The notes under the pieces were generated by a model, which searched no databases, had not been told where the DNA came from, and was given only the letters and a program-made list of their open reading frames with translations. A program made the position numbers and the translations under genes. From positions 1 through 64,000 of the IMG/VR virus record IMGVR_UViG_3300035698_018317: 64,000 nt of DNA; one strand, given 5' to 3'. Of the stretch, positions 2,344 to 63,477 are shown piece after piece; within the stretch, counting starts at the first letter, position 1; each line of letters opens with the position of its first letter.

Positions 2344-2364
2344 CCCCCCGCCCCCTAACCCTTG

Positions 2365-3100: not shown

Positions 3101-3112
3101 CCCAGCCCAGCC

Positions 3113-4156: not shown

Positions 4157-4223
4157 ATAAATAGTCCTGTTTCGTTCTAGCAGCGTGCTCCGTCTTTGGC
4201 GAGATGATTGGCCCGCTGCTTTT

Positions 4224-7100: not shown

Positions 7101-7110
7101 TGCCCGGACA

Positions 7111-7162
7111 CGTCTTGGGTAACAATATACAACGTTAGTGTTGTATATTGTTACCCAAGACG
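7111..7162. repeat. Perfect 23-bp inverted repeat with 6-nt loop
   Basis: CGTCTTGGGTAACAATATACAAC-gttagt-GTTGTATATTGTTACCCAAGACG. Confidence 0.9.
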
Positions 7163-7167
7163 AGATG

Positions 7168-10162: not shown

Positions 10163-10166
10163 TTTT

Positions 10167-11267
10167 TTATCCCTTAAGAGTATCCACAACTTTTTCGCAT
10201 ACTTCTTGTAAGGACATCTTGCCGTCAATATCCTTTAAGGAGCATACAAACGTGTGAGAAGGTTTATTTCCAAAAGTTTCTTCTACTGCTTGTCGATATT
10301 CGAAGAAGTTACGGATAGCCACATCAGTAAGGCTTTCTTTATCTTTATGATTGGGAACTACTGGAGTCTCAAAAGCGTTCACATCGCTATTTGGTTGAGT
10401 ATCCAAAATGTCCACAACCACAAGGGCAGGCACAACATTATTGGCAAATGTATTAGCTTTTCCTTTTGGTACGTCCATAGCGAATGCTGAAATGAATTCA
10501 GCACATGCCTCTGCTGTAAGATTGGCGTCATCAAGATTTTCCATAAGTTTATCAACGCAAATTGAAGCATATTGATAATAGCAGGAAGAATTAAACGACA
10601 ATGAGCCAAGGTGACCAGCCCCAGTGGTATCCTCTTCCCCAGAGTCAATCTTAAGGTCATCTATTGCTGTAAAATAATCAAATTCTTCAGCAAGGGCATT
10701 CACACCCATTGCATGGGCGACCTGTACAGCGGCATAAACTTCATGGGTTTTGACGGTAGCTTGCATTCTTCCGAACATGGCAACATCGACAGTGATGCCA
10801 ATAGGTTTCCCATGAAGTATTTTCTTGATATTCTTGATATCAAAATCGTCTTCCTTCATTGCCACAACAACTCTGTCAATAATGCTATCAATTTCTTTAT
10901 CAGACGTAAAAATCAAACAGGATGTAAGGTTTTCTTTTCCTTTTTTACTATTTCTCTTCTTGTCGAAAACTGTGTTAACGATAGCATTGGCAATATTAAC
11001 ACGAGTTTTTTCATCTTCTACAAAATCCAACTTGTTGATGATTCGTTTAAGAATCATCTGTGTTCGAATTCCGTGATAAGCATGAACTTTTTCAGCGTCC
11101 ATGTTCTCATGCCAGAATTCACGAACCATTCTCTTAAGACATTGGCTAGAAATTCTGGAGCGGCGGGAGCCACCAAATACACAATCTTTTTGTTCTCCAC
11201 TATCATCCGCATTAGGTCTAGACACGGGGTAGTTCTTCAATAATCCAATCTTTACAAATTTTGACAT
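10167..11267 (-). CDS. cas7e: Type I-E backbone subunit Cas7
   Basis: NADDSGEQKDCVFGG.RRSRISSQCLKR, DVAMFGRM, VQVAHA and DYFTAIDD. Confidence 0.95.
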   Translation of the reverse strand: MSKFVKIGLLKNYPVSRPNADDSGEQKDCVFGGSRRSRISSQCLKRMVREFWHENMDAEKVHAYHGIRTQMILKRIINKLDFVEDEKTRVNIANAIVNTVFDKKRNSKKGKENLTSCLIFTSDKEIDSIIDRVVVAMKEDDFDIKNIKKILHGKPIGITVDVAMFGRMQATVKTHEVYAAVQVAHAMGVNALAEEFDYFTAIDDLKIDSGEEDTTGAGHLGSLSFNSSCYYQYASICVDKLMENLDDANLTAEACAEFISAFAMDVPKGKANTFANNVVPALVVVDILDTQPNSDVNAFETPVVPNHKDKESLTDVAIRNFFEYRQAVEETFGNKPSHTFVCSLKDIDGKMSLQEVCEKVVDTLKG

Positions 11268-11284
11268 TTTTTTAATTCCTTCTG

Positions 11285-11815
11285 TTATGCCATTTCTGGC
11301 GAGTTAATTTTTTCTTTTTTTGATTCTACTTTTTTTACTGGTTGTTCCCAAAAATCTTTTGAGAATTTGTTTTGAACCCACATATCATCTTCTTTCCACC
11401 ATGTTAATCCTTGTAACAAATCAGCCCAATTAATCGGAATTCTTTTAGCTGCTGATAATCGTATCAGTGTTCCAAGATGTTGGAATACTGGGATTTCTTC
11501 TGTAGCATCTAGGAAAGAAAGAAATTTCCTATTCATTCCTTCTTCGCTATATTCCTTAATTAATGGTTTAATACTTTTACCAAATGATTTTGTGTCTGTA
11601 TGACGTGGGTTGATTGCGAATAAGCGTGCTGTATGAATGAAACAGAGATTACTCCAAGATTCATTTTGTGTTGGAAGGTATGGGTAAATATACCTACCAA
11701 TTTGAAACAGCTTAGTTGGGTTACTTTTCTTAAATTTTGACAATATAGCTGGGCCTCTTTTGCTTTTTGTCAATTTAACTAAATGGTCTATAAAATTGTC
11801 TATTCTTTTATTCAT
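11285..11815 (-). CDS. cse2: Type I-E small subunit Cas11 (Cse2)
   Basis: Lies between cas8e and cas7; helical, with INWADLL and KDFW motifs. Confidence 0.88.
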   Translation of the reverse strand: MNKRIDNFIDHLVKLTKSKRGPAILSKFKKSNPTKLFQIGRYIYPYLPTQNESWSNLCFIHTARLFAINPRHTDTKSFGKSIKPLIKEYSEEGMNRKFLSFLDATEEIPVFQHLGTLIRLSAAKRIPINWADLLQGLTWWKEDDMWVQNKFSKDFWEQPVKKVESKKEKINSPEMA

Positions 11816-13232
11816 TTTTCTTTCCTTTATTAAACAGGATGATTTCGAAACTTTTTAAATTTCCTTTTTGGTACAAGTATTCTAACACATTTTTTCGGCT
11901 CCCACTCATTAACTTTCTTGTTTCGTTCATGAATAATTTGTGGGCCACTTCTCTTATTTTTTTCACAAAAGATATTTTTGCTTCTACTGTCTTTTGAGAC
12001 ATGAATTCTAGAAATAAGGTGTTAGCTTCGCTCCAGAATAAAACTTTAACTTGTTCTGGACTTTCTAAAGTAAATTGTTTATAGAGACGATAAACAAAAC
12101 TTCTCAGGTGAACTCCTACACGATTAGCTTCTTCAACAACTTGACATATAATTTCCTGAATATCATCATTTTTGATACAGTCGGTTGAAAGAGGTAGTAC
12201 ATCTTCTGAAATCATTTTATATTTGGTTAATTTATCATCCATATAAAATCCATATGATTGATATCCAAAATCAATCATATCATCGAAGATGTCTAAGTTT
12301 TCATTGTTTGCAAAAACATACTCACCGTCTGCAACTCCAGCCTTGACAGAAATCACAAAGGATTTGAAATTATTCCATAAATGTTCAGCATGGGAAAAAC
12401 GGAGAGGTTTATACCCATCTTTGGTGTTTTTGTATACTACGAATGGGTCACGTAATCCTTCAATCGGTTCATTACCCTTATCCCAATACATATAGGAAAA
12501 AGTTCCATTGTCATTAGGAAGTAATTTGATGCTTCTGGAGCAACGAGTCAAATATTGCATATATCCACGGACTTTGTTATCATTTAATACCGGGGACTCA
12601 TCCTCCCAAACGGGACTATCTTCTTCTGTCTGCGGAATGTTAAGATTTTCATCTAAAGGATGGGCATTAAGCATAAATGTTTGGAATAAATTCTTTCCAG
12701 TAAGAAGAACGGGCATTCCACGTTGGCTAGACGCATGAAAAGTAGAACGATGTTCGCCAAGTCCTTTGCCAGTATTTAAGGCAAAAGATTGAAGTGTCAT
12801 CAATTGAATAGCTACATCTTCAGCTTGAACAGACGTAGTTTTGATAAAATTTCTTGATGACCATGATGCATCGGCATCTGTTAAAAAATTAAGTCTATTA
12901 ACAGATTCCTTTTTCTTTGTTTGAAGTTTGGGGTCTTGTAGGAAAGGCTTTTTGGTGTCTAGTAAATCAAAGCAAAAAGAGTTCAAATAATTGGTGGTTG
13001 ATTTATCAAAACAACCTTTTTCCCAAAGTGCTTTCCACTCTTCCTCATTGTTCAATCCGTAAGCTCTATAAAGAACGGGCAGGAACATCCTAGTGAAGGC
13101 CAAATTTTGAAGAGGCTGAGAAAATGCCGTAGATTCAATTTCGTGAGCATGTTCAAAGACGGAGATAAGGTTATGGCTTCCTTGTAACGTTGAAATCCAA
13201 TTTTCAGTTTTTAAGTCGTATGATGTCGTCAT
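11808..13232 (-). CDS. cas8e: Type I-E large subunit Cas8e (Cse1)
   Basis: YDL..ENWI, PLQNLAF.R, EEEW..LWEKG and FDL....PFLQ; GAAAGGAA SD gives a start at 13232. Confidence 0.9.
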   Translation of the reverse strand: MTTSYDLKTENWISTLQGSHNLISVFEHAHEIESTAFSQPLQNLAFTRMFLPVLYRAYGLNNEEEWKALWEKGCFDKSTTNYLNSFCFDLLDTKKPFLQDPKLQTKKKESVNRLNFLTDADASWSSRNFIKTTSVQAEDVAIQLMTLQSFALNTGKGLGEHRSTFHASSQRGMPVLLTGKNLFQTFMLNAHPLDENLNIPQTEEDSPVWEDESPVLNDNKVRGYMQYLTRCSRSIKLLPNDNGTFSYMYWDKGNEPIEGLRDPFVVYKNTKDGYKPLRFSHAEHLWNNFKSFVISVKAGVADGEYVFANNENLDIFDDMIDFGYQSYGFYMDDKLTKYKMISEDVLPLSTDCIKNDDIQEIICQVVEEANRVGVHLRSFVYRLYKQFTLESPEQVKVLFWSEANTLFLEFMSQKTVEAKISFVKKIREVAHKLFMNETRKLMSGSRKNVLEYLYQKGNLKSFEIILFNKGKKNE

Positions 13233-13265
13233 GTTATTTCCTTTCTTAATTATCATCATGTCAAG

Positions 13266-13294
13266 AATATACAGTATGATAAAATAAAAAGCAA
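13266..13294 (-). promoter_or_regulatory. Sigma70-like promoter for the cascade operon
   Basis: Minus strand TTGCTT-17 nt-TATATT between array 2 and cas8e. Confidence 0.5.
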
Positions 13295-13341
13295 GAGAAA
13301 TCCCATATTGTTTTTATTTGAAAAACATATTTTTTAGAAAC

Positions 13342-13740
13342 TTAACACCCCTACGAATGTAGGGAAAACAAAAAAAAGAAGAAGGAATTTCTCCCACGAT
13401 AAGGGACACCCCTACGTTTGTAGGGAAAACTTCTCTAAAAATTTACGAGCATCAGCAACTAGCGGGACACCCCTACGCATGTAGGGAAAACCAGCCGCAG
13501 AGAGATTCCAGAGCGTTCAGTTAGGGGCACCCCTACGCATGTAGGGAAAACGCTAGGTCAGTTCTTCGGGGCCACGTCGCACGAAAGGAACACCCCTACG
13601 TATGTAGGGAAAACCTTTCTGAGTTGCAGATTCGGTCGTGACAACGTTAGGGACACCCCTACGCATGTAGGGAAAACAAGCAATAGATAAAGCATTGAGC
13701 GAAGCTCAATGAGGGACACCCCTACGCATGTAGGGAAAAC
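13342..13740 (-). CRISPR. CRISPR array 2: 7 repeats, 6 spacers, between cas3 and cas8e
   Basis: Same repeat as array 1. Plus-strand starts at 13342, 13403, 13464, 13524, 13587, 13650 and 13713; spacers 32-35 nt. Confidence 0.97.
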
Positions 13741-13773
13741 TATAACATTTAGTAGTAGAGTAATATGTTGTGT

Positions 13774-16368
13774 TTAGTATTTTTTTAGTCTTTTGAGTTG
13801 TAGTCCATTTTCTAAATCATATTTGGCTTCGAAATTTGCTCGTTTTAAATAATTATTTTCATCTAGAATCAAAAGTCCGCAATATCTAAGTGGTGTGCGT
13901 TCCCACTCTTCTCGTATTGTTTTTTGGAAATAATTAAAGTAAGGGTTTCCAATAATTGGACATTGACTTTTTTGTAATAGTTCTATTTCTTTTTTATTTG
14001 GTATTTTTGTTAAATCGGGTGCAAGTATTTTCCTTTTTGGGTCTAAGTACCACCTTTTATCCCCTTGTTTATAGAATAAAATGACCACTTTCATTGCTGA
14101 AACAATATTTCTAGTGGATAGTTTATTCTCTTTTTCTTGTTTCTTAGAAGGATTTATGTTTAAATCATTATCTTCTTTTAAAACTATACTATTTGCTAAG
14201 TTTTCTTCTTTAACTTCTTTTTTTTCTAATTTGTCATGAGCTTTATTATAAGTTTCTTGTTCTTTTTTTGTAAGTTTTTCAAATGGTTTATACACATATT
14301 CAATTAATTCTTCAACCATATCTGGGATTTTTAATTGGGTCTTATTATGCAGTATATCATAAGTTCTTTGCATAGTATAAGAATCATAGACATAATTTTC
14401 TAGCACACCATCTTCATCGAATTCATAAACGACCCCTATTCTTGGAGAACGAAGCCCTAATGGTCGATTTATGATAAAGCGATGATTCCTGCCGCCTCGT
14501 TGTAACAATAAGTCAATTGGGCATAGAAATGTTAACATATAATCGAAATCTACATTAAGACTTTGTTCTATTATCTGAGTTCCTACTAAAATGGATATGA
14601 AAGGTCTTTTAGTACCATCTTTTCCATAATCACTAAGAACTTCTTGTGTTAATTTATCTTTATCTTCATCTCTAAATCGTGCATGAATTAATTTACGATG
14701 AATATCTGGGACCATTTTAGCTAGTAATTTATTTATTCTTTGTGCTTGTTTCACTGTGTTACAGACAATAGCTAGACATCCTCCATTTTTTATTTTTTTC
14801 AGAACATGTCCCAATAATTCATAATATTGTTGAACTACAATACCATTTTTTATTTTAAAATTAGGGTTTATATAAAAATGGTCTAATTTAATTGTTTTAG
14901 TTTTTTCAGGAGGTAATTTTTTAACAATTGTTTTATTTCCAGAAACTACACATACCCTAGGGTATGGAACGTCTTCTTTTAATTCGCCACCATAAGCTTC
15001 AACAAATTCTTTTTTCATTTGTTTTGTTAAGGTGGCAGATAGCATAATGACTGAACATCTTAGATTTTTAAGTTCTTTTAACAATCTTTTAATTAAGACT
15101 TGCATATAAGTGTCATAAGCGTGTATTTCATCAAAAATTACTACTTTATTTACTAGTCCATATAAACGGAGGAAGAAGTATTTTACAGGGACGACACCAA
15201 ACAGAGCTTGGTCTATTGTGCTATCACCAAACTGTGAGAAAAACTTACGCTTTCCACTATTGAACCATTCAAATGGGGAGACAGTATCTTTTGTGTCTAT
15301 TTTTTTATACCATTCATGAGCATTAGCATTGCCATGTCCTATTTGGAAATTTGCCTCTCCATCTGTTATATTTTCTAAATAGTTAACTGTTCTATCTACC
15401 ATGGCATTTGTAGTTGCTTGAGTTGGCATAAGAATATGCATCCCACGATGTCCAACATTTGTCATTAACTTATCTGAGGCATAGAAGCCCACTTCTGTCT
15501 TTCCCTGCCCCGTACTCATTTCGACAATCAAAAGAGATGGTTCTTTTAACTTATCTGCAATTTCTATAATTGTTTTTTGTGATTCATATGGAGTTATATT
15601 CGGGAACATTTCCTCAAAGCTTAAATCTTTAATAGGACATAAATCCATTTTGATATTATCTAATGCAAATTTAGCCTTTTGAGGAAGGTCTTTTACATAT
15701 TCTTGCCATGTTGTTTCTTCCCCTGCAAAGGGGAAGAAATTTTCATCGGAAGCAATCCAATCGGAGAGAGAAAGTAATCCTGAAAAGAAGAAATAAAAGT
15801 GTTGAGGCAACTTTGCTTTCTTCCATATTTTTGACGGAATTGGGAACACCTTTTGAATCACATCTATTGCTAATTCTTGTTGTTCTTTCCACTTATCATC
15901 TTTTAAACATTTAAAGAAAAATCTTCCATCTTGTTTTCTAGGTTTTGGGAGAACTGAGTATCGCCCATGATGACCACCAAGAAGGGAACAAAGTGTATCA
16001 GGCAATTTTCCATTCATTATTTGTTTAGAAAATACTTCATGTCGGAAATGTGGTTTGTTCTTTCCATCTAGACCAAAAAAGTTATACCCATCATCTTGTA
16101 ACGGCTTATAAGCTTCAGATTGAATAGCAAAATTTGGTGTTATTTTACCAATATCATGATATGGAACTATTCCAACTACAAATTGTATTGCTTCATCTTT
16201 AGTTAATCCCAATGAATTAGCCATATATTCTAATTCTTCATCAGGCAGTATCCTAAGAAGAATTTCTTTAGCAATAAAACCCGAATCTAACATATGAAAT
16301 AAAGCAGGATGTGTTTTCTTTGTTGCTCTGTCAAATTTACCCCAAATTTTATAATCTATTTTATTCAT
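13774..16368 (-). CDS. cas3: Cas3 HD nuclease-helicase
   Basis: HDIGK, HHG, SDWIASD, STGQGKTE, DEIH, SATL and QRGGR.HR; start at 16368 overlaps the upstream stop (TGATG). Confidence 0.95.
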   Translation of the reverse strand: MNKIDYKIWGKFDRATKKTHPALFHMLDSGFIAKEILLRILPDEELEYMANSLGLTKDEAIQFVVGIVPYHDIGKITPNFAIQSEAYKPLQDDGYNFFGLDGKNKPHFRHEVFSKQIMNGKLPDTLCSLLGGHHGRYSVLPKPRKQDGRFFFKCLKDDKWKEQQELAIDVIQKVFPIPSKIWKKAKLPQHFYFFFSGLLSLSDWIASDENFFPFAGEETTWQEYVKDLPQKAKFALDNIKMDLCPIKDLSFEEMFPNITPYESQKTIIEIADKLKEPSLLIVEMSTGQGKTEVGFYASDKLMTNVGHRGMHILMPTQATTNAMVDRTVNYLENITDGEANFQIGHGNANAHEWYKKIDTKDTVSPFEWFNSGKRKFFSQFGDSTIDQALFGVVPVKYFFLRLYGLVNKVVIFDEIHAYDTYMQVLIKRLLKELKNLRCSVIMLSATLTKQMKKEFVEAYGGELKEDVPYPRVCVVSGNKTIVKKLPPEKTKTIKLDHFYINPNFKIKNGIVVQQYYELLGHVLKKIKNGGCLAIVCNTVKQAQRINKLLAKMVPDIHRKLIHARFRDEDKDKLTQEVLSDYGKDGTKRPFISILVGTQIIEQSLNVDFDYMLTFLCPIDLLLQRGGRNHRFIINRPLGLRSPRIGVVYEFDEDGVLENYVYDSYTMQRTYDILHNKTQLKIPDMVEELIEYVYKPFEKLTKKEQETYNKAHDKLEKKEVKEENLANSIVLKEDNDLNINPSKKQEKENKLSTRNIVSAMKVVILFYKQGDKRWYLDPKRKILAPDLTKIPNKKEIELLQKSQCPIIGNPYFNYFQKTIREEWERTPLRYCGLLILDENNYLKRANFEAKYDLENGLQLKRLKKY

Positions 16369-16685
16369 CACCCACCAATGCCCATGTTGTTCTTGTAAGG
16401 CCATATGATACGGCCAGATTGTAAGATATCCCACACCATTTTTTTCCATACTTTTCTTATATGGATATGAAATTCTTCAGATGTTACTAATTTTTTTTCA
16501 ATAAGTTGGAATCCCAATTCAGAATCATCAACACCCATTCTATTAAGAGCTTCCCACAAATATCCTACTATTTTATCAACTGTTCTATATTTCTTTCTAA
16601 TATCTTTATCATGCATTGCGACTTCTGCATGTTCGAATATTAGTTCGGCTGCTTCGCACACACGTTCTGATAATTCTGTACACAT
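16368..16685 (-). CDS. Small helical protein whose stop overlaps the cas3 start; paralog of 16691-16981
   Basis: Starts MCTELSERVCEAAELIFEH. Confidence 0.75.
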   Translation of the reverse strand: MCTELSERVCEAAELIFEHAEVAMHDKDIRKKYRTVDKIVGYLWEALNRMGVDDSELGFQLIEKKLVTSEEFHIHIRKVWKKMVWDILQSGRIIWPYKNNMGIGG

Positions 16686-53111: not shown

Positions 53112-55403
53112 ATGACGATACCTACATCAAGCAATTTCCCTACAACATTTGATTCCGATAGTAATCTGTACGAGGTACATGATGCTCTGAGGGTTCGTCT
53201 ATCAGAAGATTATACTCCGGGGGATACGTCTATAACAATAGAAGGTGATGCGGATACAATAGCAAAATTTCCATCCACTGGATTGATTACTCTTACAGAG
53301 CAAATAAGTGAAATTGATGACCGAGCAATAAGTTTTTATTATGCTTCTAGAACTTTAACTACATTTGATGGATTAGAAATATTATCTGGATTTGACGATG
53401 ATGTTGTGAAACCAGCCACATTAACAAATGTAACACAAAATGTTATGGCATCTCATCACAATAACATCAAAGATGCTATTATTGCTATAGAAGAATTTGT
53501 TGGAGTACAAGGAACTGTTGACACAATGCCTTTTGGGGATACTATGACTGGAAGAATTAATTTTCTTCGTAATTTAGTTTTAACACCTAGAGCTTGGTTC
53601 ACTTCAGATAAAAAGGTTGGCCTTGTCCCGTTAGAAGTAGATTTTACAGACCAGAGTTTTCGTCTAGGTGACGGTTCCGTTACTTTCTTATGGGATTTTG
53701 GAGACCAAAACCCATCATACATTTCATTTGCATCACTCAATACAATATCTGTTATTAGTTATGTGCCAACAGACGAAGTAAATGTTCTGGTGCAAGACCT
53801 AGATGGTGGAAATGTAACAAAAACTTATTCTACTCCCGGCATTTATGATGTAACACTTACAGTTACGAATGAACATGGACAAGATGTAGTAGAGTTTAAA
53901 AACTTCATAGAAGCACGAACAGCCGCTCCTTTAGAGGCTGATGTAGAGTTTGATGCCACCACTGTTCAAAACAGTTCTCTTGGAGACACTACTCCTTTAT
54001 TTGACAGATTAGCAACGGCTCCGGGTGGTCCTTGGACTATACCACCTACAATACGTTCAAAAATAAATACGCTTGTAACAATGGAAGTACCAACTGGAGA
54101 AGACCCGTTAACACCGGGATACTCATATGCTGGCGAAGAATTAAGTAATGGAGTGGCTATTGACCCAATTATTAGCTATACGTGGTCGCTTGGAGACGAT
54201 TTAACGCATTCTAACAGCATGGGAGCCAGAGCTTCATACGGAATTGGTGGTGTATATGATATGAAACTCAGAACAGATACAAGTTTTGGGTCATATAGAA
54301 TTACAACATATGAAAACGTAATTGATATTATTGAAAATAGAAACCTTTGGTTGTTTACGAAGAACGGGAATGAAGTAAAAGGCAATGAGTTTGGACTAAT
54401 AAGTGAAACATTCAAAATAGCAACACAAACACTAACAGTTGCTCAGAATGATAAATTTTTGAATGGGACCGGAGAAGAAACAAGAGCCAAAAGAGAATTT
54501 AATAGGAATGTAAGTTTCACAAATGTTAATACAACTTCTTCAGGTAGTAGTGGAGAAGGACTTGCTGTATGGTCTAGTGGCGGAATTGCTGGTAGCGCAT
54601 TAAGCATACAAACTGTAGAGGCTTTTAAATATAATGGGTTTGATGACACATACACAGACCCCGCAATTACTATAACAAGACCGTGGAACTGGGTCTTCTT
54701 AAATTCTGGTAATCTTGCATACTTCCTGTTTGGCCCTGACCCACTTGCTACTCCAAACACAAACTTAACTAATCAAGAAAAAACAATATTAAACATGTCA
54801 ACGTTTACTGACTCGGATGAAACATTAGTGAATTCGAATTATTTAAACGGTGCTGAAGAGTTGCAAGAAAATCCAACAGACGGTTATACAGCAGGAGAAC
54901 CAGATTCAGGAAGGTTCTCAGTATATCGCTCTGCTTGGAAAGACCAATCAGGTTATTTCTTAAGAAATGATGGAGTGGGAGAGTTCTTCAGAATAAAAAG
55001 TTTTTATCAAACAAGTGGCACGTTAACAGAAACCGTTCAAAACTTGATAAAGTTACCAGATATGACGGGAACCACTAAATTAGAAGGTGAATTAGTAAGC
55101 ATGAGTAATGGCTTGTTCTTCTTTAACAATAGTGGAAGTATTTCCGCATATAATGATAATTCTGGGGTTTGGGAAACAGGGTCTTCTATAGTTACTAGTT
55201 TTAGAAATCTACAAGATTCAACGGCAAATGATTTCGATAACCCTGCCAATACTCTTTTGGCGACAAGTGATGGAGACAGAATAGCCTACCTCAGTTATGA
55301 TTATAGTACTAATGCAATGATAAAATTCAATGGAGTAGATTTAACATTTACTTTACTTAGTTCACGACCTAGTGGAGACCAATGGGCGATGGGAGTATAT
55401 TAA
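53112..55403 (+). CDS. PKD-domain virion protein
   Basis: FLWDFGD, TYSTPGIYDVTLTV and WSLGDD; N-terminus related to that of 52121-53110 (HHN..KDAII.IE). Confidence 0.8.
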   Translation: MTIPTSSNFPTTFDSDSNLYEVHDALRVRLSEDYTPGDTSITIEGDADTIAKFPSTGLITLTEQISEIDDRAISFYYASRTLTTFDGLEILSGFDDDVVKPATLTNVTQNVMASHHNNIKDAIIAIEEFVGVQGTVDTMPFGDTMTGRINFLRNLVLTPRAWFTSDKKVGLVPLEVDFTDQSFRLGDGSVTFLWDFGDQNPSYISFASLNTISVISYVPTDEVNVLVQDLDGGNVTKTYSTPGIYDVTLTVTNEHGQDVVEFKNFIEARTAAPLEADVEFDATTVQNSSLGDTTPLFDRLATAPGGPWTIPPTIRSKINTLVTMEVPTGEDPLTPGYSYAGEELSNGVAIDPIISYTWSLGDDLTHSNSMGARASYGIGGVYDMKLRTDTSFGSYRITTYENVIDIIENRNLWLFTKNGNEVKGNEFGLISETFKIATQTLTVAQNDKFLNGTGEETRAKREFNRNVSFTNVNTTSSGSSGEGLAVWSSGGIAGSALSIQTVEAFKYNGFDDTYTDPAITITRPWNWVFLNSGNLAYFLFGPDPLATPNTNLTNQEKTILNMSTFTDSDETLVNSNYLNGAEELQENPTDGYTAGEPDSGRFSVYRSAWKDQSGYFLRNDGVGEFFRIKSFYQTSGTLTETVQNLIKLPDMTGTTKLEGELVSMSNGLFFFNNSGSISAYNDNSGVWETGSSIVTSFRNLQDSTANDFDNPANTLLATSDGDRIAYLSYDYSTNAMIKFNGVDLTFTLLSSRPSGDQWAMGVY

Positions 55404-55404
55404 T

Positions 55405-57309
55405 ATGGCAACGAGTTTTCCACCAATTCCGGTTTTTCCAGCAGCAATAGATTCTGATTATACATTATTCTTAGTGTATAATACTTCTGAAGCTCAATTG
55501 TCTAGCAATAATCAGCCATGGTCAAATGAAATTTCAATAGTGCCAGTAGGCGACAATGACCTTGAACAATGGGGCGACAATGGTTTTGCTAATATATCTG
55601 GTGAATTATTTTACTATGATGCCGTTACCAAGAATGCCGCTGGAAAGATAAAAACACTTAGAAGGTGTGCTAGAAATTTGTCCGGTTCTCAAACTCAATA
55701 CAATCCATCTGGAACTTGGGTGAGGGGATATGTTGTAGCAGAACATCATAATCAATTGGTAGACACTACCTTAAAATTAGAAAACTATATTGGGATAAAC
55801 TACTCGACAAACACACTTACTTTAGATTATAAAATAAGAGATTTATTATCTGTTCCTGATTTCACAGATGACCACGGATGTGCTGACGTAGTGTTTACTT
55901 TTATTATTGACGAAAGTGCAAGCAATAATTCTGTTGGGACAGTAGTTGTTTTTAAGGTAGTTATAACTGGTACTTTTAATAGTTATGTGTTAGATTTTGG
56001 AGACGGCAACACAACAACAGATTTAGAAGGAACTCACACATACGCCACAAATATCACCCCAGAACCAGTTGTAATTGTTTCTAATGAAACATGCGAGATT
56101 GTTCAAACTCCGTATAATTTTGCTAATCCTAATGAGCCACCTACAGAGGAAGATGAAAGATTTGAAATACCAATACCGGAAGTGCCTGAATTCCCGGCAA
56201 TACTTATACCTGAAATAGATGTACCAGAAACAACGTTGACATTACCTCAAATAGTTTTCCCGTGTTTGGATATTGCGTTAAATCCAATGAGTATTATTTT
56301 TGTTCCACCAAATCCAGTGCCAAGTATCATTGAATTTGGGCCTGTGGATATACCTTCTATTATCAGTGTAACTGATAGCATACCTTCTATTATCAGTGTA
56401 ATAGATAGTATACCTTCTGTTATCAGTTTAATAGGTAGCCTACCTTCTGTTATCAGTTTAATAGCTGATTTAACAAATATTACTCTTATTGGACTAGCAG
56501 ATATTACTCTTATTGGCGTAACAGATATTACTCTTATTGGCATATCAGATATTAGTCTTCTAGGAGTAGAAGATATTACTCTTATTGGCATATCAGATAT
56601 TAGCCTTCTTGGAATATCAGACATTAATCTTCTAGGAGTAGAAGATATTACTCTTATTGGAATATCAAATATTAATCTTCTTGGAATATCAGACATTAAT
56701 CTTCTTGGAATACGAGATATTAGCCTTTATGGAATACGGGATATTAGTCTTATTGTTCCTGATATTACCGTATCTATTGTATGTAGTAGTGGTGCCGCTG
56801 TCATGGGCTTGGAAGCTCCTGTTGAAGCTATGGCTAGTTTCGATACTGGTTCCGAAGCTATCCCCAATGTAACTGAGTTCAGTAAAGAAGACGGGACTAT
56901 TTTGGACCAAAGGGAAGTAGAAAGATTATCAGAAGATATAAAATTAATTCATAATTTACCGATGGAAATACAACTTAATTCTGAAACCCTTCCAGAATCT
57001 ATTAAAATAGATTCATCAGATATTCCCGGTGTAATAGATTTGAAATTAGACGGCAATTTCCCATCTGTGTTGAAAATAGATGCTAGTGGTTTGCCAGAAA
57101 GTATTCAGGTCATTGGTATACCTGAATCTATAGAATTAAAAGGAACTATTCCTGACGAAATTAAAATAACTGCACCAGAAGATTTAGAAGTGCCACTAGT
57201 TTATAGAGGTGGCCCTATACCTATAAAATTTGATGAAACGGCATTCCAAAATGCGGATGGTGAAGACTTCCCGTGTTTTGCTATCGTTCCTTGTCCTTCT
57301 AAAAAATGA
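55405..57309 (+). CDS. PKD-like virion/fibre protein with a tandem 8-aa repeat shaft
   Basis: Shared N-terminal domain (VAEHHNQL), LDFGDGN, then I(T/S/N)L(I/L)G repeats. Confidence 0.8.
   Translation: MATSFPPIPVFPAAIDSDYTLFLVYNTSEAQLSSNNQPWSNEISIVPVGDNDLEQWGDNGFANISGELFYYDAVTKNAAGKIKTLRRCARNLSGSQTQYNPSGTWVRGYVVAEHHNQLVDTTLKLENYIGINYSTNTLTLDYKIRDLLSVPDFTDDHGCADVVFTFIIDESASNNSVGTVVVFKVVITGTFNSYVLDFGDGNTTTDLEGTHTYATNITPEPVVIVSNETCEIVQTPYNFANPNEPPTEEDERFEIPIPEVPEFPAILIPEIDVPETTLTLPQIVFPCLDIALNPMSIIFVPPNPVPSIIEFGPVDIPSIISVTDSIPSIISVIDSIPSVISLIGSLPSVISLIADLTNITLIGLADITLIGVTDITLIGISDISLLGVEDITLIGISDISLLGISDINLLGVEDITLIGISNINLLGISDINLLGIRDISLYGIRDISLIVPDITVSIVCSSGAAVMGLEAPVEAMASFDTGSEAIPNVTEFSKEDGTILDQREVERLSEDIKLIHNLPMEIQLNSETLPESIKIDSSDIPGVIDLKLDGNFPSVLKIDASGLPESIQVIGIPESIELKGTIPDEIKITAPEDLEVPLVYRGGPIPIKFDETAFQNADGEDFPCFAIVPCPSKK
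56320..56763 (+). repeat. Intragenic tandem repeats: PS(I/V)I units followed by about twelve 24-nt units
   Basis: Repeated GATATTA(C/G)TCTT(A/C)TTGG-like units encoding DITLIGIS, DISLLGVE and variants. Confidence 0.9.
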
Positions 57310-59679: not shown

Positions 59680-60258
59680 ATGAGTGTATTTAGAGTAGCC
59701 TTAAACAACATTGACCAAGGTAGATTAGACATTAATCCTATTACTGGTCTACAATCAGACCCAAGTATCCAGAGAACTGTTTATGTCATGGGACCGAACC
59801 AAGTAAATCGTCTGCTAGCAGACGGCGAAACGTTCACGGATTGCAACTACTGGAAACAGTTTGCTTATCCTCAGACGACCAAGGCATTAGCGTTCGTAGA
59901 AGTAGTCACAGATGACGGAAGTGTTTGGGCCAATGGTTCAAGCAGCAATGTCGTTGACAGTGACACCTTGACTGGTGCTGCTGGTAGCATTTATTCCACA
60001 GCCGGAAATACGTGGGATATCGAAGCTGAGCATGATAGTTATGCAATTTACACCCGTATCATTAACACTGCCGCAACTGGCACTGTTAACATTCAGTTGA
60101 ATGATACCGCAATCTTCTCGCTGGGTGGCGGCGAAGAAATGGTATTCGATATCGGCGACCTTGCTATAACCAAGGTAGCAGTTGGAAACAACAGTTCTGG
60201 TGCTGTAGATTCGCCAATCGAAGTTATTGCTTTGATTCAGTCGATTTGCACTAGCTAA
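59680..60258 (+). CDS. Probable virion structural protein
   Basis: GGGAGA SD; acidic and Thr/Ser/Gly-rich; followed by a strong terminator. Confidence 0.6.
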   Translation: MSVFRVALNNIDQGRLDINPITGLQSDPSIQRTVYVMGPNQVNRLLADGETFTDCNYWKQFAYPQTTKALAFVEVVTDDGSVWANGSSSNVVDSDTLTGAAGSIYSTAGNTWDIEAEHDSYAIYTRIINTAATGTVNIQLNDTAIFSLGGGEEMVFDIGDLAITKVAVGNNSSGAVDSPIEVIALIQSICTS

Positions 60259-60335: not shown

Positions 60336-61331
60336 ATGGTTAAACTTTTTCAAAAACGACGTAATAGAAAACCAAGAACATCTGAGTTCAAACCTTTGTC
60401 TATAAAGAGATTTAGTGAAATAAGAAACAATATCTTAGTAATAAGAAAATTAGGCGGAATCGGAGATATTGTTATGCATCGTTATATTTTCGAAAGTCTG
60501 AAAAAAGTAAATGAAGACATAAAAATCACATTTGCATGTCCACCAGAATTTCATGAATTTGTAGATGAACACCCTTATATTGATAAATTAGAAAATAGTA
60601 ATACAATAGATTATTCAGATTATATCATATCATTTGATACCACAAGGTGTTGTTTAAGAACCGAATACTCTACCTCTCCAAAAGTAACAATGAATCGTCC
60701 AGATATATGGGCAAAGCATTGTGGCATAAAAATCAATAATTATGATATGCATTTCGATTTAACGGATGAGCAGAAGAAATGGGGAGAAGATAAAATAAAA
60801 GAAATAAGAAATGGCGTAGATGGGCCTTCTGTTTTGTTATCTCCATTATCAGTAGCTATGGATAGAAGTTTTACGAATGACCAAATAAGGATGATAGTAA
60901 AAAACTTACGCAAGATGGGATATTTTGTATTTGGCACACATCATCTTCCCGTTTCGGTATTTAGTGAACTTAATGTTCCATTATTAAGGAAACTACCTCC
61001 AAAAAATTGGATATCAACAATTAATGCTGCTGATTATGTGATAACTGTTGATACAGGTACGTTTCATATAGCCGGGGGATTAGGTAAGCCTATGGCTGCT
61101 ATGTTTACATGGACTGACGGGAAAGTTCGTGGGAATCATTATGATTTTATCCTAATGCAAAATCATCGTGATGATGGATGGAATTGTGGTCCTTGTTGGG
61201 TTCCTTGCAAAAGATATAACGGACCATATAAGCCTTGTTGTACTGAACTATCTGAAGATATGATTATGGCAAGCATAAATAAAATGTTAAATAAATGGCC
61301 GTATCAAACTAAGGTAATCATAGATGGTTAG
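60336..61331 (+). CDS. Glycosyltransferase family 9 (heptosyltransferase-like)
   Basis: ILVIRKLGGIGDIV, HPYID and ADYVITVDTGTFHIAGGLGKP. Confidence 0.85.
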   Translation: MVKLFQKRRNRKPRTSEFKPLSIKRFSEIRNNILVIRKLGGIGDIVMHRYIFESLKKVNEDIKITFACPPEFHEFVDEHPYIDKLENSNTIDYSDYIISFDTTRCCLRTEYSTSPKVTMNRPDIWAKHCGIKINNYDMHFDLTDEQKKWGEDKIKEIRNGVDGPSVLLSPLSVAMDRSFTNDQIRMIVKNLRKMGYFVFGTHHLPVSVFSELNVPLLRKLPPKNWISTINAADYVITVDTGTFHIAGGLGKPMAAMFTWTDGKVRGNHYDFILMQNHRDDGWNCGPCWVPCKRYNGPYKPCCTELSEDMIMASINKMLNKWPYQTKVIIDG

Positions 61332-61569
61332 AAATATAAAACCTGATAAAGTGAAAACAAGTGTCGTTACCAAAAATGGTGAATGCAAAATTGAACTTAC
61401 TCTTAATATTAATATAAATTCTGAAGGCGTGACTGTTAACGCAAATGCAACTGCCGCTGAAGAAAAGAAGAAAAAATATATTGATAAGGAAGAAGACAAT
61501 GTGGCATGGGCTATCCCTGAATTTGACAGTGAAAAAATAGACTTTGGTAAACAAAAAATTGGAGATTAA
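61324..61569 (+). CDS. Small hypothetical protein
   Basis: 81 aa; overlaps the GT9 stop and lies directly upstream of the actin gene. Confidence 0.6.
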   Translation: MVRNIKPDKVKTSVVTKNGECKIELTLNININSEGVTVNANATAAEEKKKKYIDKEEDNVAWAIPEFDSEKIDFGKQKIGD

Positions 61570-61570
61570 T

Positions 61571-62587
61571 ATGGCTGGAATAGGCTTTGATTGCGGAACA
61601 TACAATTTAGTTTGTTGTAAACGCAACGAAAAAAACGAATTAGAATATAAAAGAGAAGTAAATGCTTTCATTGAAATGCCTATAGAAAATAGGTTCGTTT
61701 TCAACATGATGAAAGATGCTGGAGTTCCTCTTATTGAAAGAGCGGATGCGGGTGTTGCATATGCTTTGGGTGAAGCAGCAGTTAACATTGCTTATACCAT
61801 GAATAATGTAGAACTAAAAAGGCCCATGAAAGATGGATGCCTAAATCCAAAAGAAAAATATGCTCAACAGATTATGAGCATCATGATGCATAGTCTTATA
61901 GACACATCGGATAATGGCGAACCTGTTTATTACAGTGTTCCCGCAAATGCAATTAACGAAGAGACGGATTCGGATTATCATGGAAAAGTATTAGAAGCCG
62001 TATTCAAAGCATTTAAGGATGATGATGATAATAAGGTTGAACCATTCCCCATTAATGAAGGTTTGGCATTAGTTTATTCTGAATTAAAGAAAAAAGCTTA
62101 TACTGGATTGGGAATTAGTTTTGGAGCAGGAATGGTAAATGTTTGTTTTGCAAACAGTGGATTCCCTGTGTTTGAGTTTTCAATAGTAAACTCGGGTGAC
62201 TGGATTGATAAGATGGCGGCAAAAGCCACTGGCGAAACATCAACTTTCATTAATAAAGAAAAAGAAAAGCTTGATTTGACGGTTGACTCAGATTCATTAG
62301 TTCAACGGGCAATTAAGGCTCAATATGAAATTATGGTTCAAAAGACTGTAACAGAAATAAAAAGAGGATTAGAAGAATCAAATAACAAAGCTAGAAACCC
62401 CGGACATCCTATTGATATAGTGATTTCTGGTGGAACTAGTTCCCCCAAGGGTTTTAAAGAATTATTTGCTGATATTGTGGAAAAATCACATCTCCCGATA
62501 GACTTAGGAGATATTATCAGGCCAAAAGACCCTCTTTATTCTGTGGCTCGTGGATGTCTATTCGCCGCAGAAATGTCGATGCAATAA
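61571..62587 (+). CDS. Actin-family ATPase (salactin/volactin/MamK-like)
   Basis: Phosphate-1 GFDCGT, connect-1 INEGLA, phosphate-2 GISFGAG, adenosine ISGGTS and connect-2 VARG; GGAGA SD. Confidence 0.85.
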   Translation: MAGIGFDCGTYNLVCCKRNEKNELEYKREVNAFIEMPIENRFVFNMMKDAGVPLIERADAGVAYALGEAAVNIAYTMNNVELKRPMKDGCLNPKEKYAQQIMSIMMHSLIDTSDNGEPVYYSVPANAINEETDSDYHGKVLEAVFKAFKDDDDNKVEPFPINEGLALVYSELKKKAYTGLGISFGAGMVNVCFANSGFPVFEFSIVNSGDWIDKMAAKATGETSTFINKEKEKLDLTVDSDSLVQRAIKAQYEIMVQKTVTEIKRGLEESNNKARNPGHPIDIVISGGTSSPKGFKELFADIVEKSHLPIDLGDIIRPKDPLYSVARGCLFAAEMSMQ

Positions 62588-62607
62588 ACCAAAGAAAGAA
62601 GGAAAGA

Positions 62608-63207
62608 ATGAATGAAATGAAAGAAAAGCTTCTAGACGAAATAAAAGAAGAGCTTAAAGGTACATTTAAACATCGTTTGTTTGATAAAAAAAATGATAGA
62701 GATTTTGAAACAGCATATAAAAACATGTGCGTTGATATGTTAAAAGATATATTAGACAATAACTCTGTGAAAATAAGATGGACTAAAGATGAAAATCTTG
62801 AAGAAAAGGAATTGAAAATGGATGAATATAAGCGAGGGTATATATATGACCCAATGAGTGAAGACAAAATATTGAGAGATGACATGCCAGCAAAACTAAC
62901 CTATGAAGACGCCCGAGAAAAAGCCACAGTTGACATCAGAAGCGAACATAAAGTGTGCGGAAATAATGATGATGGCTTCTGCGTTGAATCAGTAAGATTA
63001 GCAGGAAACAAAAAACATAAAACTCAAAACTCGTATGTTGATAAAATACACGAACATGTAGAAATACTTAGAAAATTCACCTCTGGAGAAGAAATGTTAA
63101 AAGAGATGTCGTATGTAGTTCGTGGTAAAATGAGTTCAATCATGCAGGAAATGTGCGATAAGATTATAGTAGAAACTAAGAATTTCAAACATTCTTTAAA
63201 TAAGTAA
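62608..63207 (+). CDS. Hypothetical charged helical protein
   Basis: AAGGAAAGA-ATG directly after the actin gene. Confidence 0.65.
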   Translation: MNEMKEKLLDEIKEELKGTFKHRLFDKKNDRDFETAYKNMCVDMLKDILDNNSVKIRWTKDENLEEKELKMDEYKRGYIYDPMSEDKILRDDMPAKLTYEDAREKATVDIRSEHKVCGNNDDGFCVESVRLAGNKKHKTQNSYVDKIHEHVEILRKFTSGEEMLKEMSYVVRGKMSSIMQEMCDKIIVETKNFKHSLNK

Positions 63208-63246
63208 AATTCGTAATTCTCAAACAAAGAAAGAAGGAAAGAAAGT

Positions 63247-63477
63247 ATGGAACCCGTAATTCAAAAAGAAGTGTGCGATTTAGGTGCTGGTGCTTATATG
63301 CTTATGCATGGGTACAAAGTAATAGGTCGCAGAGGTCGTTGTATCATTTTTGAAGTAGAGCAAAGTGCAGATGACGAGTTCGAACAGAAGCAACTTGAAT
63401 ATTTATCTAGTGAATTTCACAGATTTGATTCTTGTTTAATGTCGTTGAAGAAGATTAATGAGTACATGCCCAAATAA
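63247..63477 (+). CDS. Small hypothetical protein
   Basis: 76 aa; same 19-nt purine leader as 62608. Confidence 0.65.
   Translation: MEPVIQKEVCDLGAGAYMLMHGYKVIGRRGRCIIFEVEQSADDEFEQKQLEYLSSEFHRFDSCLMSLKKINEYMPK

What the first reader, a model, noticed from the sequence alone, without database searches (positions are those of the whole stretch)
61324..63477. Phage-encoded actin resembling haloarchaeal salactin/volactin, with small co-oriented partners
Seen: all five actin-fold motifs, with the distinctive GISFGAGMVNVC, GDWID..AA.ATG, GGTSSPKGF and PLYSVARG segments, which from recall match the salactin/volactin family. Known: nucleus-forming jumbo phages use the tubulin PhuZ for positioning, phage actins are far less studied, and salactin is a dynamically unstable filament linked to DNA partitioning. 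Inference: an actin-based spindle for positioning phage DNA or factories, with 61324, 62608 or 63247 as adaptors.
Basis: partly seen in the sequence, partly recalled or inferred. Interest (0 to 1): 0.8.

Follow-up and report, generated by a model that had tools for sequence, protein, structure and literature searches.

The report
Huge-phage volactin-type actin with two partners
A giant bacteriophage from a salt lake carries a well-conserved gene for a filament-type actin of the recently named volactin family, always flanked by the same two small phage-specific genes. This points to a phage-built actin cytoskeleton that has not been described in the literature searched here and whose role is still untested.

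Summary
Window 61571-62584 (+) encodes a 338-aa actin-fold ATPase. It matches Pfam Volactin (PF25216) end to end (234 bits against a cut-off of 35). It does not match Pfam Salactin, and it scores below threshold for MreB, MamK and Actin. A confident AlphaFold model (pLDDT 95) is closest to MamK, MreB, BeeR and eukaryotic actin filaments, not to Hsp70 or sugar kinases.

The window is a tailed huge phage: it has baseplate genes, a type I-E Cas set, and comes from a 225-kb IMG/VR contig. The actin is the best-conserved gene of its neighbourhood (median 65% identity across 56 viral loci, contigs up to 572 kb).

- **81-aa ORF (61324):** translationally coupled to the actin, with a conserved C-terminal WAIPDF…KIxFGK peptide.
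- **76-aa DUF5659-like ORF (63247):** single or tandem domain. In the reverse test, 77 of 78 loci found with it carry the actin.
- **62608 ORF:** a variable insert, not a partner.

I found no nearby centromere-like repeats, and no PhuZ or chimallin in a complete 595-kb relative. Function (cargo or assembly positioning versus host shape control) remains inferred. I rate it a new variant of a known kind, interest about 0.6.

The parts
61324..61569 (+). 81-aa partner A. It has an N-terminal beta-hairpin-like segment (VVTKNGECKIELTLNININ), a variable acidic linker, and a conserved C-terminal peptide W-A-I-P-[DE]-F...K-I-x-F-G-K.
   Evidence: Its ATG overlaps the stop of the upstream GT9 gene (ATGGTTAG). 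Its TAA is one base before the actin ATG. Present directly upstream of the actin in 54 of 57 viral loci and 74 of 78 further loci. Invariant F67, F74 and G75; near-invariant P65. No Pfam, PHROG or NCBIfam hit. The ESM Atlas model is disordered, pLDDT 0.35. A recognisable homolog sits next to a 40%-identical actin in L144 (E = 7e-6).
61571..62587 (+). Actin-fold ATPase, 338 aa, Pfam Volactin family (the coordinates include the stop codon).
   Evidence: PF25216: 234 bits against a cut-off of 35, full length. AF2 model pLDDT 94.9, pTM 0.92. Foldseek best matches are the MamK filament 5ljv (TM 0.72/0.74), MreB, the BeeR filament and eukaryotic actin. Median 65% identity over 56 viral loci, against 35-44% for flanking genes. 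1799 relatives in the 90% clusters and 917 clusters at 50% identity.
62111..62146 (+). Phosphate-2 loop GISFGAGMVNVC. In related phages an intein is inserted between S183 and F184 (nt 62119/62120).
   Evidence: L055 and L056 carry a 370-aa LAGLIDADG-type intein (C...HN|C) exactly here. At least 12 further clusters of about 700 aa are split at the same place. A contig in salt-lake run X2 leaves the window at 62120 into the intein start, CLVPGTKIYT.
62608..63207 (+). Variable-slot ORF, 199 aa from the ATG at 62608 (217 aa from 62554). It is not a conserved partner.
   Evidence: No homolog in the other 56 loci. The slot is empty in about 60% of loci and elsewhere holds unrelated ORFs of about 200 aa. 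No family hits.
62587..62617 (+). Copy 1 of a 31-nt direct repeat. It is the spacer carrying the ribosome-binding site after the actin stop.
   Evidence: 87% identical to 63222-63252. The two copies flank the variable ORF, consistent with insertion into the spacer between the actin gene and the partner B gene.
63222..63252 (+). Copy 2 of the 31-nt direct repeat, immediately before the start of partner B.
63247..63477 (+). 76-aa partner B, a small alpha/beta domain (beta-alpha-beta-beta-alpha-alpha), DUF5659-like. It is a single domain here and tandem-duplicated in about 40% of relatives.
   Evidence: Median 62% identity over 53 loci, second only to the actin. Invariant D11, L12, G13, A16, Y17, M20, F35, F45, Y52, S55, F60, D61, M65, K68, K69. 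AF2 pLDDT 93.5. No significant fold match in PDB or BFVD. ESM Atlas nearest named clusters are DUF5659 (score 0.88, 196 shared features; structural TM 0.69/0.68). Weak Pfam hits to Phage_Orf51 (5e-4) and DUF5659 (0.04). Reverse test: 77 of 78 loci found with it carry the actin upstream.
59680..60258 (+). Conserved upstream neighbour, 192 aa, function unknown. Listed as context, not claimed as part of the module.
   Evidence: Present upstream of the module in 53 of 57 loci at 30-47% identity. No family hit.
60336..61331 (+). GT9-like (heptosyltransferase-like) glycosyltransferase, immediately upstream and overlapping the start of partner A. Listed as context.
   Evidence: Pfam Glyco_transf_9 24 bits (cut-off 22); weak TIGR02193 and TIGR02195 hits. 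Present in 33 of 57 loci. GT9 genes also lie near the actin in the distant phage relatives L144 and L146.

Best explanation
The locus is a three-gene phage cytoskeletal module: partner A (81 aa), a volactin-family actin (338 aa), and partner B (76 aa, DUF5659-like).

Shown:
- The actin has a complete nucleotide-binding core.
- Its predicted fold is closest to filament-forming actins.
- It is under strong purifying selection in a large clade of huge tailed phages.
- It travels with the same two small genes, even at 40% actin identity.

Inferred:
- The actin polymerises with ATP into dynamic cytoplasmic filaments during infection.
- Partner A, which is mostly disordered, docks its conserved C-terminal W-A-I-P-D-F...K-I-x-F-G-K peptide on the actin, as ParR's tail does on ParM. 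Its N-terminal beta segment oligomerises or anchors. In one distant relative (L146) this segment is replaced by a transmembrane helix.
- Partner B acts as a dimer or pseudo-dimer that links filaments to a cargo or regulates them.

The module is co-oriented with, and lies at the end of, a baseplate and structural gene block, with no promoter or terminator signal above chance. I therefore think it is expressed late. On that reading it organises the infected cell for building very large virions, by positioning assembly sites, particles or packaged or replicating DNA. In a phage lineage without a detectable PhuZ tubulin or chimallin shell, it would fill a role comparable to PhuZ.
For: - **Family and fold:**
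- **Conservation and abundance:**
- **Intein in the phosphate-2 loop:**. By general knowledge inteins favour conserved functional sites of important proteins; this is a sign the site matters, not proof.
- **Partner linkage in both directions:**
- **Translational coupling:**
- **Tandem duplication of partner B:**
- **Transmembrane helix on the upstream small protein in L146:**
- **Structural-gene context in three divergent phage lineages:** (window; L058, judged by ORF size and composition only, not confirmed by a family search; L144, PKD-domain proteins).
- **No tubulin, FtsZ, chimallin or second actin** in the window or in the complete 595-kb relative LR756511.1.
- **Family precedent for dynamic filaments:** volactin filaments polymerise and depolymerise and span the cytoplasm with membrane-anchored tips (PMC10869688).
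- **Bacterial relatives inside gas-vesicle clusters:**. This shows the family is repeatedly recruited next to genes for large protein-shelled bodies.
Against: - No experiment and no RNA data; no RNA run was listed.
- No complex prediction could be run, so both partner-actin contacts are inference from linkage and motif conservation.
- Partner B has no demonstrated DNA-binding or actin-binding fold.
- No cargo is identified.
- Ser183 replaces the usual phosphate-2 Asp. This is family-wide and so compatible with volactin's dynamics, but its effect on hydrolysis is unknown.
- Gene position is weak evidence for timing.
- The searches for PhuZ and chimallin used single-sequence phmmer and would miss very remote homologs.
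Confidence: 0.5

Rival explanations
1. Host-shape or envelope remodelling. The phage actin acts like volactin or MreB on the host cell. It changes cell shape or size, or guides envelope enzymes, so that the cell can hold and release very large virions. The small partners link it to membrane or wall machinery.
For: - The only characterised member of the family, volactin, affects the rod-to-disk shape transition.
- Acidobacterial members are paired with an N-acetylmuramoyl-L-alanine amidase domain protein in 38 loci.
- A GT9 heptosyltransferase-like gene overlaps the start of partner A, and GT9 genes recur near the actin in distant phage relatives.
- In L146 the upstream small protein has a transmembrane helix.
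Against: - GT9 is missing from 24 of 57 loci while the three-gene module persists.
- The actin has no MreB-type score (21.5 bits, below the cut-off of 27), and no RodZ, MreC or MreD-like partner is present.
- The cellular partners (the amidase and the 'fam 2' protein) are not in the phage locus, and the phage partners are not next to cellular homologs.
Confidence: 0.25
2. ParMRC/AlpACS-type DNA transport. One small partner binds repeated sites on phage DNA and couples them to growing actin filaments. The filaments then segregate or move phage genomes, either as plasmid-like maintenance or as transport to a replication site.
For: - The gene order, a small protein next to an actin, resembles alpA-alpC of prophage CGP3, where AlpA binds alpS repeats and AlpC filaments and both are needed for efficient replication (PMC4446434).
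- Tandem or dimeric partner B would suit binding of repeats.
- Salactin, from a neighbouring actin family, is linked to DNA partitioning.
Against: - No iterated repeats lie within about 1 kb of the module in the window or in 57 loci. The only repeat arrays are coding repeats 4-5 kb upstream.
- The genes abut or overlap, leaving no intergenic centromere.
- Neither partner hits a ribbon-helix-helix, HTH or other DNA-binding family.
- The module sits with structural genes, whereas alpAC are early genes.
- The Salactin HMM is not matched.
Confidence: 0.15
3. A non-polymerising actin-fold ATPase, such as a chaperone, a kinase or a scaffold acting as a monomer.
For: The actin fold is shared with Hsp70 and sugar kinases. 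Ser replaces the phosphate-2 Asp.
Against: - The top 50 structural matches are all actins, MreB, MamK, BeeR and actin-related proteins (Arp1, Arp4). None is an Hsp70 or a kinase.
- There is no Pfam HSP70 or kinase hit, whereas E. coli MreB itself cross-hits HSP70.
- The family's type member forms filaments in vivo.
Confidence: 0.05

Closest known systems
Volactin (HVO_2015, Haloferax volcanii; Pfam PF25216)
   Same: Same Pfam family, with a full-length match at 234 bits. About 35% identity to haloarchaeal members (Halogeometricum, Haloarcula, Natrinema), which themselves score 436-466 bits. Shares the Ser-for-Asp phosphate-2 loop and the GDWID and GGTS..GF motifs.
   Different: It is not an ortholog. 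The phage proteins form their own clade (SH-aLRT 99), separate from the haloarchaeal clade. It is encoded by a tailed phage whose other genes look bacterial: a type I-E Cas set, an LPS-type GT9, and bS21 in a relative. It has two phage-specific partners that are absent from cellular loci. Volactin's known phenotype is cell shape; the phage role is unknown.
Salactin (Halobacterium salinarum; Pfam PF25229)
   Same: A prokaryotic actin with dynamic instability, placed near MamK and MreB.
   Different: It is a separate Pfam family, and the window protein gives no Salactin hit at E <= 0.1. Salactin has a long charged disordered N-terminal tail, whereas the phage protein starts its phosphate-1 motif at residue 5.
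AlpC/AlpA/alpS of Corynebacterium prophage CGP3
   Same: A phage-encoded actin co-transcribed with a small adaptor. It shows that phages can use their own actin for intracellular organisation.
   Different: AlpA binds alpS repeats upstream of the operon, and the genes are early. Here there are no adjacent repeats, two partners instead of one, a structural-gene context and a different actin family. Sequence relatedness to AlpC was not tested because no AlpC sequence was at hand.
ParMRC plasmid partition
   Same: An actin plus a small protein whose C-terminal tail binds the filament. The proposed role of partner A's conserved C-terminal peptide follows this logic.
   Different: No parC-like centromere, no ribbon-helix-helix signature and a different gene order. 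It is not on a plasmid.
MamK (magnetosome actin) and MreB
   Same: These are the closest solved structures (MamK TM 0.72/0.74; MreB TM 0.59-0.68) and share the RPMKDG and DPLxxVARG motifs. MamK positions organelles, which is a useful functional analogy given the gas-vesicle-linked bacterial relatives.
   Different: All scores are below family thresholds: NCBIfam MamK 28 bits against 400, Pfam MreB_Mbl 21.5 against 27.
PhuZ tubulin spindle of nucleus-forming (chimallin) jumbo phages
   Same: A phage-encoded cytoskeletal polymer in a very large phage. It is the conceptual precedent for positioning during infection.
   Different: A different protein superfamily. No PhuZ, FtsZ or chimallin homolog was detectable in the window or in the complete relative LR756511.1.

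Membership tests
Actin-fold (ASKHA) ATPase, filament-forming branch | Five conserved motifs: phosphate-1, connect-1, phosphate-2, adenosine and connect-2 | tested here: met
   Four motifs (connect-1, phosphate-2, adenosine, connect-2) were aligned to E. coli MreB by hhalign at probability 95%; the aligned region starts at residue 62. Phosphate-1 (D7-x-G9-T10) is read directly from the sequence. Family-wide invariant or near-invariant: D7, G9, T10, E163, G185, G187, G287, G288, T289, G328. Ser183 replaces the canonical phosphate-2 Asp.
Actin-fold (ASKHA) ATPase, filament-forming branch | Overall fold closer to polymerising actins than to Hsp70 or sugar kinases | tested here: met
   AF2 pLDDT 94.9. 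The Foldseek PDB top 50 contains only MamK, MreB, BeeR, actin and actin-related proteins (Arp1, Arp4).
Actin-fold (ASKHA) ATPase, filament-forming branch | Nucleotide-dependent polymerisation | not testable with these tools
   Needs purified protein or live imaging.
Volactin family (Pfam PF25216) | Score above the curated gathering threshold over the whole domain | tested here: met
   234.4 bits against 35, profile positions 3-321 of 321. Haloarchaeal controls score 436-466 bits, and the E. coli MreB control gives no Volactin hit.
Volactin family (Pfam PF25216) | Orthology with haloarchaeal volactin (nested in, or sister to, the haloarchaeal clade) | tested here: not met
   In the MreB-rooted tree the phage clade (27 rows, SH-aLRT 99) and the haloarchaeal clade (99) are separate lineages within a larger clade (95). 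This was a quick search and no AU test was run.
Salactin family (Pfam PF25229) | Match to the family HMM | tested here: not met
   No hit at E <= 0.1. The model is in the library: it gave a sub-threshold hit to a Bryobacterales protein.
Salactin family (Pfam PF25229) | Long charged disordered N-terminal tail | tested here: not met
   The protein begins MAGIGFDCGT, with phosphate-1 at residue 5. The tail is described in PMC10746226.
MreB/MamK | Score above the family thresholds | tested here: not met
   PF06723: 21.5 bits against 27. NCBIfam MamK: 28.4 against 400. MreB PRK13927: 17.7 against 293.
ParMRC / AlpACS-type DNA-transport cassette | Iterated centromere-like repeats next to the operon | tested here: not met
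   None within the module or its flanks in the window or within about 1 kb in 57 loci. Sites elsewhere in the genome are not excluded.
ParMRC / AlpACS-type DNA-transport cassette | Adjacent small adaptor that binds both DNA and filament | tested here: inconclusive
   Two strictly linked small genes are present, but neither shows a known DNA-binding fold or family.
Nucleus-forming jumbo phages (Chimalliviridae-like) | Chimallin shell protein and, often, PhuZ tubulin | tested here: not met
   phmmer --max with phiKZ gp54, phiKZ PhuZ and E. coli FtsZ against all ORFs of the window and of LR756511.1 returned only noise (E > 0.3). Sensitivity to remote homologs is low.
DUF5659 (Pfam PF18903), for partner B | Match to the family HMM | tested here: inconclusive
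   The window protein gives no hit. One of 13 orthologs reaches E = 0.043, and Phage_Orf51 reaches 5e-4 in 2 of 13. ESM Atlas feature and structure searches point to DUF5659 clusters. One BFVD DUF5659 model matched weakly, at TM 0.50.

The most novel reading that the evidence does not exclude
The largest known phages build their own actin cytoskeleton, a volactin-type filament with two adaptor proteins of previously unseen kinds. They use it instead of the PhuZ tubulin and chimallin system to organise virion assembly or genome handling. More broadly, the volactin family would be a general prokaryotic 'cargo-positioning' actin, recruited independently to gas vesicles, to cell-wall enzymes, to haloarchaeal shape control and to phage infection.
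Probability: 0.35. Interest if true: 0.8.

Novelty: new variant of a known kind. Interest (0 to 1): 0.6.

Why it matters
Phage-encoded cytoskeletons are known mainly from the PhuZ tubulin of nucleus-forming jumbo phages and from one prophage actin, AlpC. This locus shows a different polymer family that is conserved, abundant and under strong selection. It occurs across a widespread clade of huge phages, with contigs up to 572 kb in IMG/VR and 634 kb in Logan and ENA assemblies, and it has its own accessory proteins.

Actin is not mentioned in the jumbo- and huge-phage reviews or in the main text of the founding huge-phage paper that I could read.

The module is compact (three genes, about 1.6 kb without the insert). 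It could be expressed heterologously to ask whether it forms dynamic filaments and what the partners do. That makes testable the question of how giant phages organise infected cells without a phage nucleus. It would also give the newly named volactin family its first candidate binding partners.

Tried and rejected
- **Direct sequence search of the PDB with the actin:** no relative found. Fold search was used instead.
- **PHROGs:** no family for the actin or either partner.
- **Fold searches of partner B** against PDB and BFVD: nothing significant, best E = 0.06-0.25.
- **Partner A in the ESM Atlas:** disordered, no relatives.
- **62608 ORF as a fast-evolving homolog of other slot ORFs:** best cross-hit E = 0.005, and the alignment is not convincing, so I rejected it as a conserved partner.
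- **Centromere search:** direct, inverted and tandem repeats in the window, and k-mer clustering in 57 loci, found only coding repeats far upstream.
- **Promoter and terminator scan:** counts were not above shuffled controls.
- **RNA evidence:** no RNA run was listed. The DNA contigs laid on the region were low-depth fragments that showed strain variants and the intein allele only.
- **Genome-collection scan with a 39-sequence alignment:** failed for lack of a conserved stretch, and was repeated with 10 sequences.
- **N-terminally extended family members as possible salactins:** those with a named source are Planctomycetota proteins.
- **Haloarchaeal host idea** (salt-lake source plus the volactin link): not favoured. 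GC is 36%, and the phage carries a type I-E Cas set, a GT9 LPS-type transferase, a class II CCA-adding enzyme and a myovirus baseplate, with ribosomal protein bS21 in a relative.


Full report
**What is there.**
The finding's interval holds four co-oriented ORFs on the + strand:
- 61324-61569, 81 aa.
- 61571-62587, 338 aa from the ATG. The ORF listing starts it at an upstream TTG, 61544.
- 62608-63207, 199 aa (217 aa if started at 62554).
- 63247-63477, 76 aa.

The upstream GT9-like gene ends inside the first ORF's start codon context (ATGGTTAG). The first ORF's TAA is one base before the actin ATG.

**Is it an actin, and which one?**
Pfam places the protein in Volactin (PF25216) at E = 2.9e-69 and 234 bits (cut-off 35), over profile positions 3-321 of 321. 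MreB_Mbl (21.5 bits) and Actin (12 bits) are below threshold. Salactin (PF25229), which is a separate Pfam family, is not hit at all. NCBIfam gives only far sub-threshold MamK and MreB hits.

Controls behave as expected. Haloarchaeal megaplasmid homologs score 436-466 bits on Volactin. E. coli MreB hits MreB_Mbl, HSP70, FtsA and Actin but not Volactin.

A profile of 41 family members aligns to E. coli MreB with 95% probability. It superposes RPMKDG, the connect-1 Glu, the phosphate-2 loop (GISFGAGMVN on VVDIGGGTTE), GDWID on GDRFD, the adenosine motif and DPLxxVARG. The aligned region begins at residue 62, so phosphate-1 (D7-x-G9-T10) is read directly from the sequence. The one systematic departure is Ser183 in place of the phosphate-2 Asp, which is nearly invariant across the family.

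An AlphaFold2 model built on that alignment is very confident (pLDDT 94.9, pTM 0.92). Its best PDB matches are the MamK filament (TM 0.72/0.74), MreB, the BeeR filament and eukaryotic actins. No Hsp70 or sugar kinase appears in the top 50.

**Is it a phage gene?**
The window is identical to a 225-kb IMG/VR contig. It carries:
- baseplate wedge, gp25, gpV and P2-I genes;
- a CCA-adding enzyme, Tpt1 and Hsp20;
- a full type I-E interference set, cas3-cse1-cse2-cas7-cas5-cas6e.

DNA runs that hold it are salt-lake metagenomes.

Relatives of the actin at 53-76% identity lie on 56 other viral contigs of up to 572 kb. GenBank's huge phage LR756511.1 (595 kb) carries one at 60% identity, and LR745208.1 (485 kb) carries a 30%-identical member. 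The 5.8-billion-protein collection holds 1799 relatives, some on contigs of 634 kb. At 50% clustering there are 917 clusters.

GC content (36%), the Cas type, the LPS-type GT9 and a bS21 gene in a relative point to a bacterial rather than an archaeal host. The Mahaphage-type largest phages are predicted to infect Bacteroidetes (PMC7162821). Membership of this window in that clade was not tested.

**Place in the family.**
A scan of one genome per species found 212 cellular relatives at 31-37% identity. The MreB-rooted tree (quick IQ-TREE) shows four groups:
- a bacterial clade whose genes sit inside gas-vesicle clusters;
- an Acidobacteriota clade whose genes follow an Amidase_2 protein;
- a mixed clade that contains the haloarchaeal volactin-like proteins;
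- a phage clade of 27 rows (SH-aLRT 99), nested in a 33-row clade (99) made mostly of further phage-like contigs.

The last group includes L144-L146, which carry RNR with an intein, ClpP, bS21 and dCMP deaminase.

The protein is therefore a volactin-family member but not a haloarchaeal-type ortholog. Two 'cellular' hits (Chloracidobacterium and Nitrosotalea MAGs) are mis-binned phage contigs, because they carry the phage partners.

**The partners.**
Across the 57 loci, the 81-aa gene lies immediately upstream in 54 and the 76-aa gene downstream in 54. The 62608 ORF occurs only in the window. Median identities are 65% for the actin and 62% for the 76-aa protein, against 35-44% for every other neighbour, including the 81-aa protein at 41%.

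In the reverse direction, 78 further loci were fetched with the 76-aa protein alone. Of these, 77 have the actin just upstream and 74 have the 81-aa gene. HMMs of both partners find nothing next to the 78 cellular homologs. They do find both partners next to a phage actin only 40% identical to the window's (L144; E = 7e-6 and 8e-21).

- **Partner A** has a short beta-rich N-terminus, a variable acidic linker and a conserved C-terminal W-A-I-P-[DE]-F...K-I-x-F-G-K. It is predicted to be disordered. In L146 the equivalent small protein has a transmembrane helix and ends in ...KPAKFG.
- **Partner B** folds confidently (pLDDT 93.5) as beta-alpha-beta-beta-alpha-alpha. It is tandem-duplicated in about 40% of loci. 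It has no significant PDB or BFVD match. It looks like a remote DUF5659 or Phage_Orf51 domain, which are families of unknown function.

**What argues about function.**
- No iterated repeats lie in or beside the module, either in the window or in 57 loci. The genes abut, so a ParMRC/AlpACS layout with an adjacent centromere is not present.
- Promoter-like and terminator-like sites are at chance level.
- The module closes a long + strand block of baseplate and structural genes. The distant phage L144 has its actin next to PKD-domain proteins. In L058 the actin lies among large ORFs that look structural, but this was not confirmed by a family search.
- No PhuZ, FtsZ, chimallin, MreB, FtsA or second actin is detectable in the window or in the whole of LR756511.1 (low sensitivity).
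- A LAGLIDADG intein interrupts the phosphate-2 loop in L055 and L056 and in at least a dozen other clusters. An intein-bearing allele co-occurs in the same lake. By general knowledge of intein biology, this fits a functionally constrained nucleotide site.
- Volactin, the only studied family member, forms dynamic filaments that bridge the cytoplasm with membrane-anchored tips and affects cell shape (PMC10869688). Salactin, in the sister family, is linked to DNA partitioning (PMC10746226). AlpC/AlpA/alpS shows that a phage can use an actin plus an adaptor to move its DNA (PMC4446434).

**Conclusion.**
- **Shown:** a volactin-family, filament-type actin is a conserved gene of a widespread huge-phage clade and forms a fixed three-gene module with two phage-specific small proteins.
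- **Inferred:** it polymerises. Partner A's C-terminal peptide and partner B couple it to an anchor or cargo. It organises late infection, for example virion assembly or genome positioning.

Host-shape remodelling is the main rival. A ParM-like DNA pump is possible but lacks its expected anatomy. A non-polymerising role is unlikely.

I found no description of this module in the literature I could search, although automatic annotation already labels such proteins 'actin-like ATPase' and PF25216. I rate it a new variant of a known kind.

Noticed in passing
window 8979-16449 (- strand): The phage carries a complete type I-E CRISPR interference gene set: cas3 (13777-16449), cse1 (11811-13259), cse2 (11288-11815), cas7 (10170-11267), cas5 (9545-10228) and cas6e (8979-9545). 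No cas1 or cas2 was seen in the window.
   Followed up: partly
window 6979-7165: Two tandem 61-nt units (85% alike) each contain a TATAAT-like box, and are followed by a long near-perfect hairpin at 7108-7165. The period equals a type I-E repeat plus spacer, but the units are too alike to be a normal array.
   Followed up: partly
window 1-4200: This stretch has GC 0.48 (against 0.36 elsewhere) and strong A-over-T skew (+0.27). It has no convincing ORFs. A repeated 63-nt unit occurs at 1360-1422 and 1506-1568, and its 25-nt core recurs at 2397-2449. There are no tRNA or Rfam hits. Unexplained; it may encode non-coding RNA genes.
   Followed up: partly
L055 1930-4059; L056 5992-8130; window 62119/62120: A LAGLIDADG-type intein of about 370 aa is inserted in the actin phosphate-2 loop (GxS|C...HN|CGAGMVN). 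At least 12 further 50%-identity clusters are split at the same place. A contig in salt-lake run X2 shows an intein-bearing allele alongside the intein-free window allele.
   Followed up: yes
L067-L075, L077, L079, L087, L088, L092 (for example L075 480-8145): Bacterial volactin-family genes sit inside gas-vesicle gene clusters (four GvpL/F paralogs, GvpG and a CDC48-type AAA ATPase). The genomes are MAGs of Omnitrophota, Saganbacteria, Nitrospirota, Scalindua, Elusimicrobiota, Lentisphaerota and Bacteroidota. The actin gene is always preceded by an unannotated ORF of 150-200 aa. My one literature search found no paper linking gas vesicles with an actin.
   Followed up: partly
L081, L085, L110 and 35 other Acidobacteriota loci (for example L110 3791-5984): In Bryobacteraceae and Solibacteraceae chromosomes the volactin-family gene directly follows a protein of about 400 aa with an N-acetylmuramoyl-L-alanine amidase domain. 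This suggests a cell-wall-linked role in that lineage.
   Followed up: partly
window 62587-62617 and 63222-63252: A 31-nt direct repeat (87% identical) of the spacer carrying the ribosome-binding site flanks the genome-specific ORF at 62608-63207. The same slot between the actin and partner B is empty in about 60% of related phages and holds unrelated ORFs of about 200 aa in the rest.
   Followed up: yes
L060 and L061: Contigs binned into a Chloracidobacterium MAG and a Nitrosotalea (archaeal) MAG carry the phage actin together with the phage-specific partner genes. They are most likely mis-binned huge-phage fragments.
   Followed up: yes
window 56350-56755: In-frame tandem repeats (periods 24, 30 and 72 nt) lie inside the 645-aa ORF at 55372-57309. 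Comparable coding repeats occur at the same relative place in many related loci. It is probably a fibre or beta-helix-like structural protein.
   Followed up: no
L140-L142 (Halogeometricum pHBOR01, Haloarcula pNG700, a Natrinema 987-kb replicon): Haloarchaeal volactin-family genes lie on megaplasmids or secondary replicons. Each is preceded by a gene of about 300 aa, annotated 'permease' in Natrinema. One of the actin genes is annotated 'cell division protein FtsA'.
   Followed up: no
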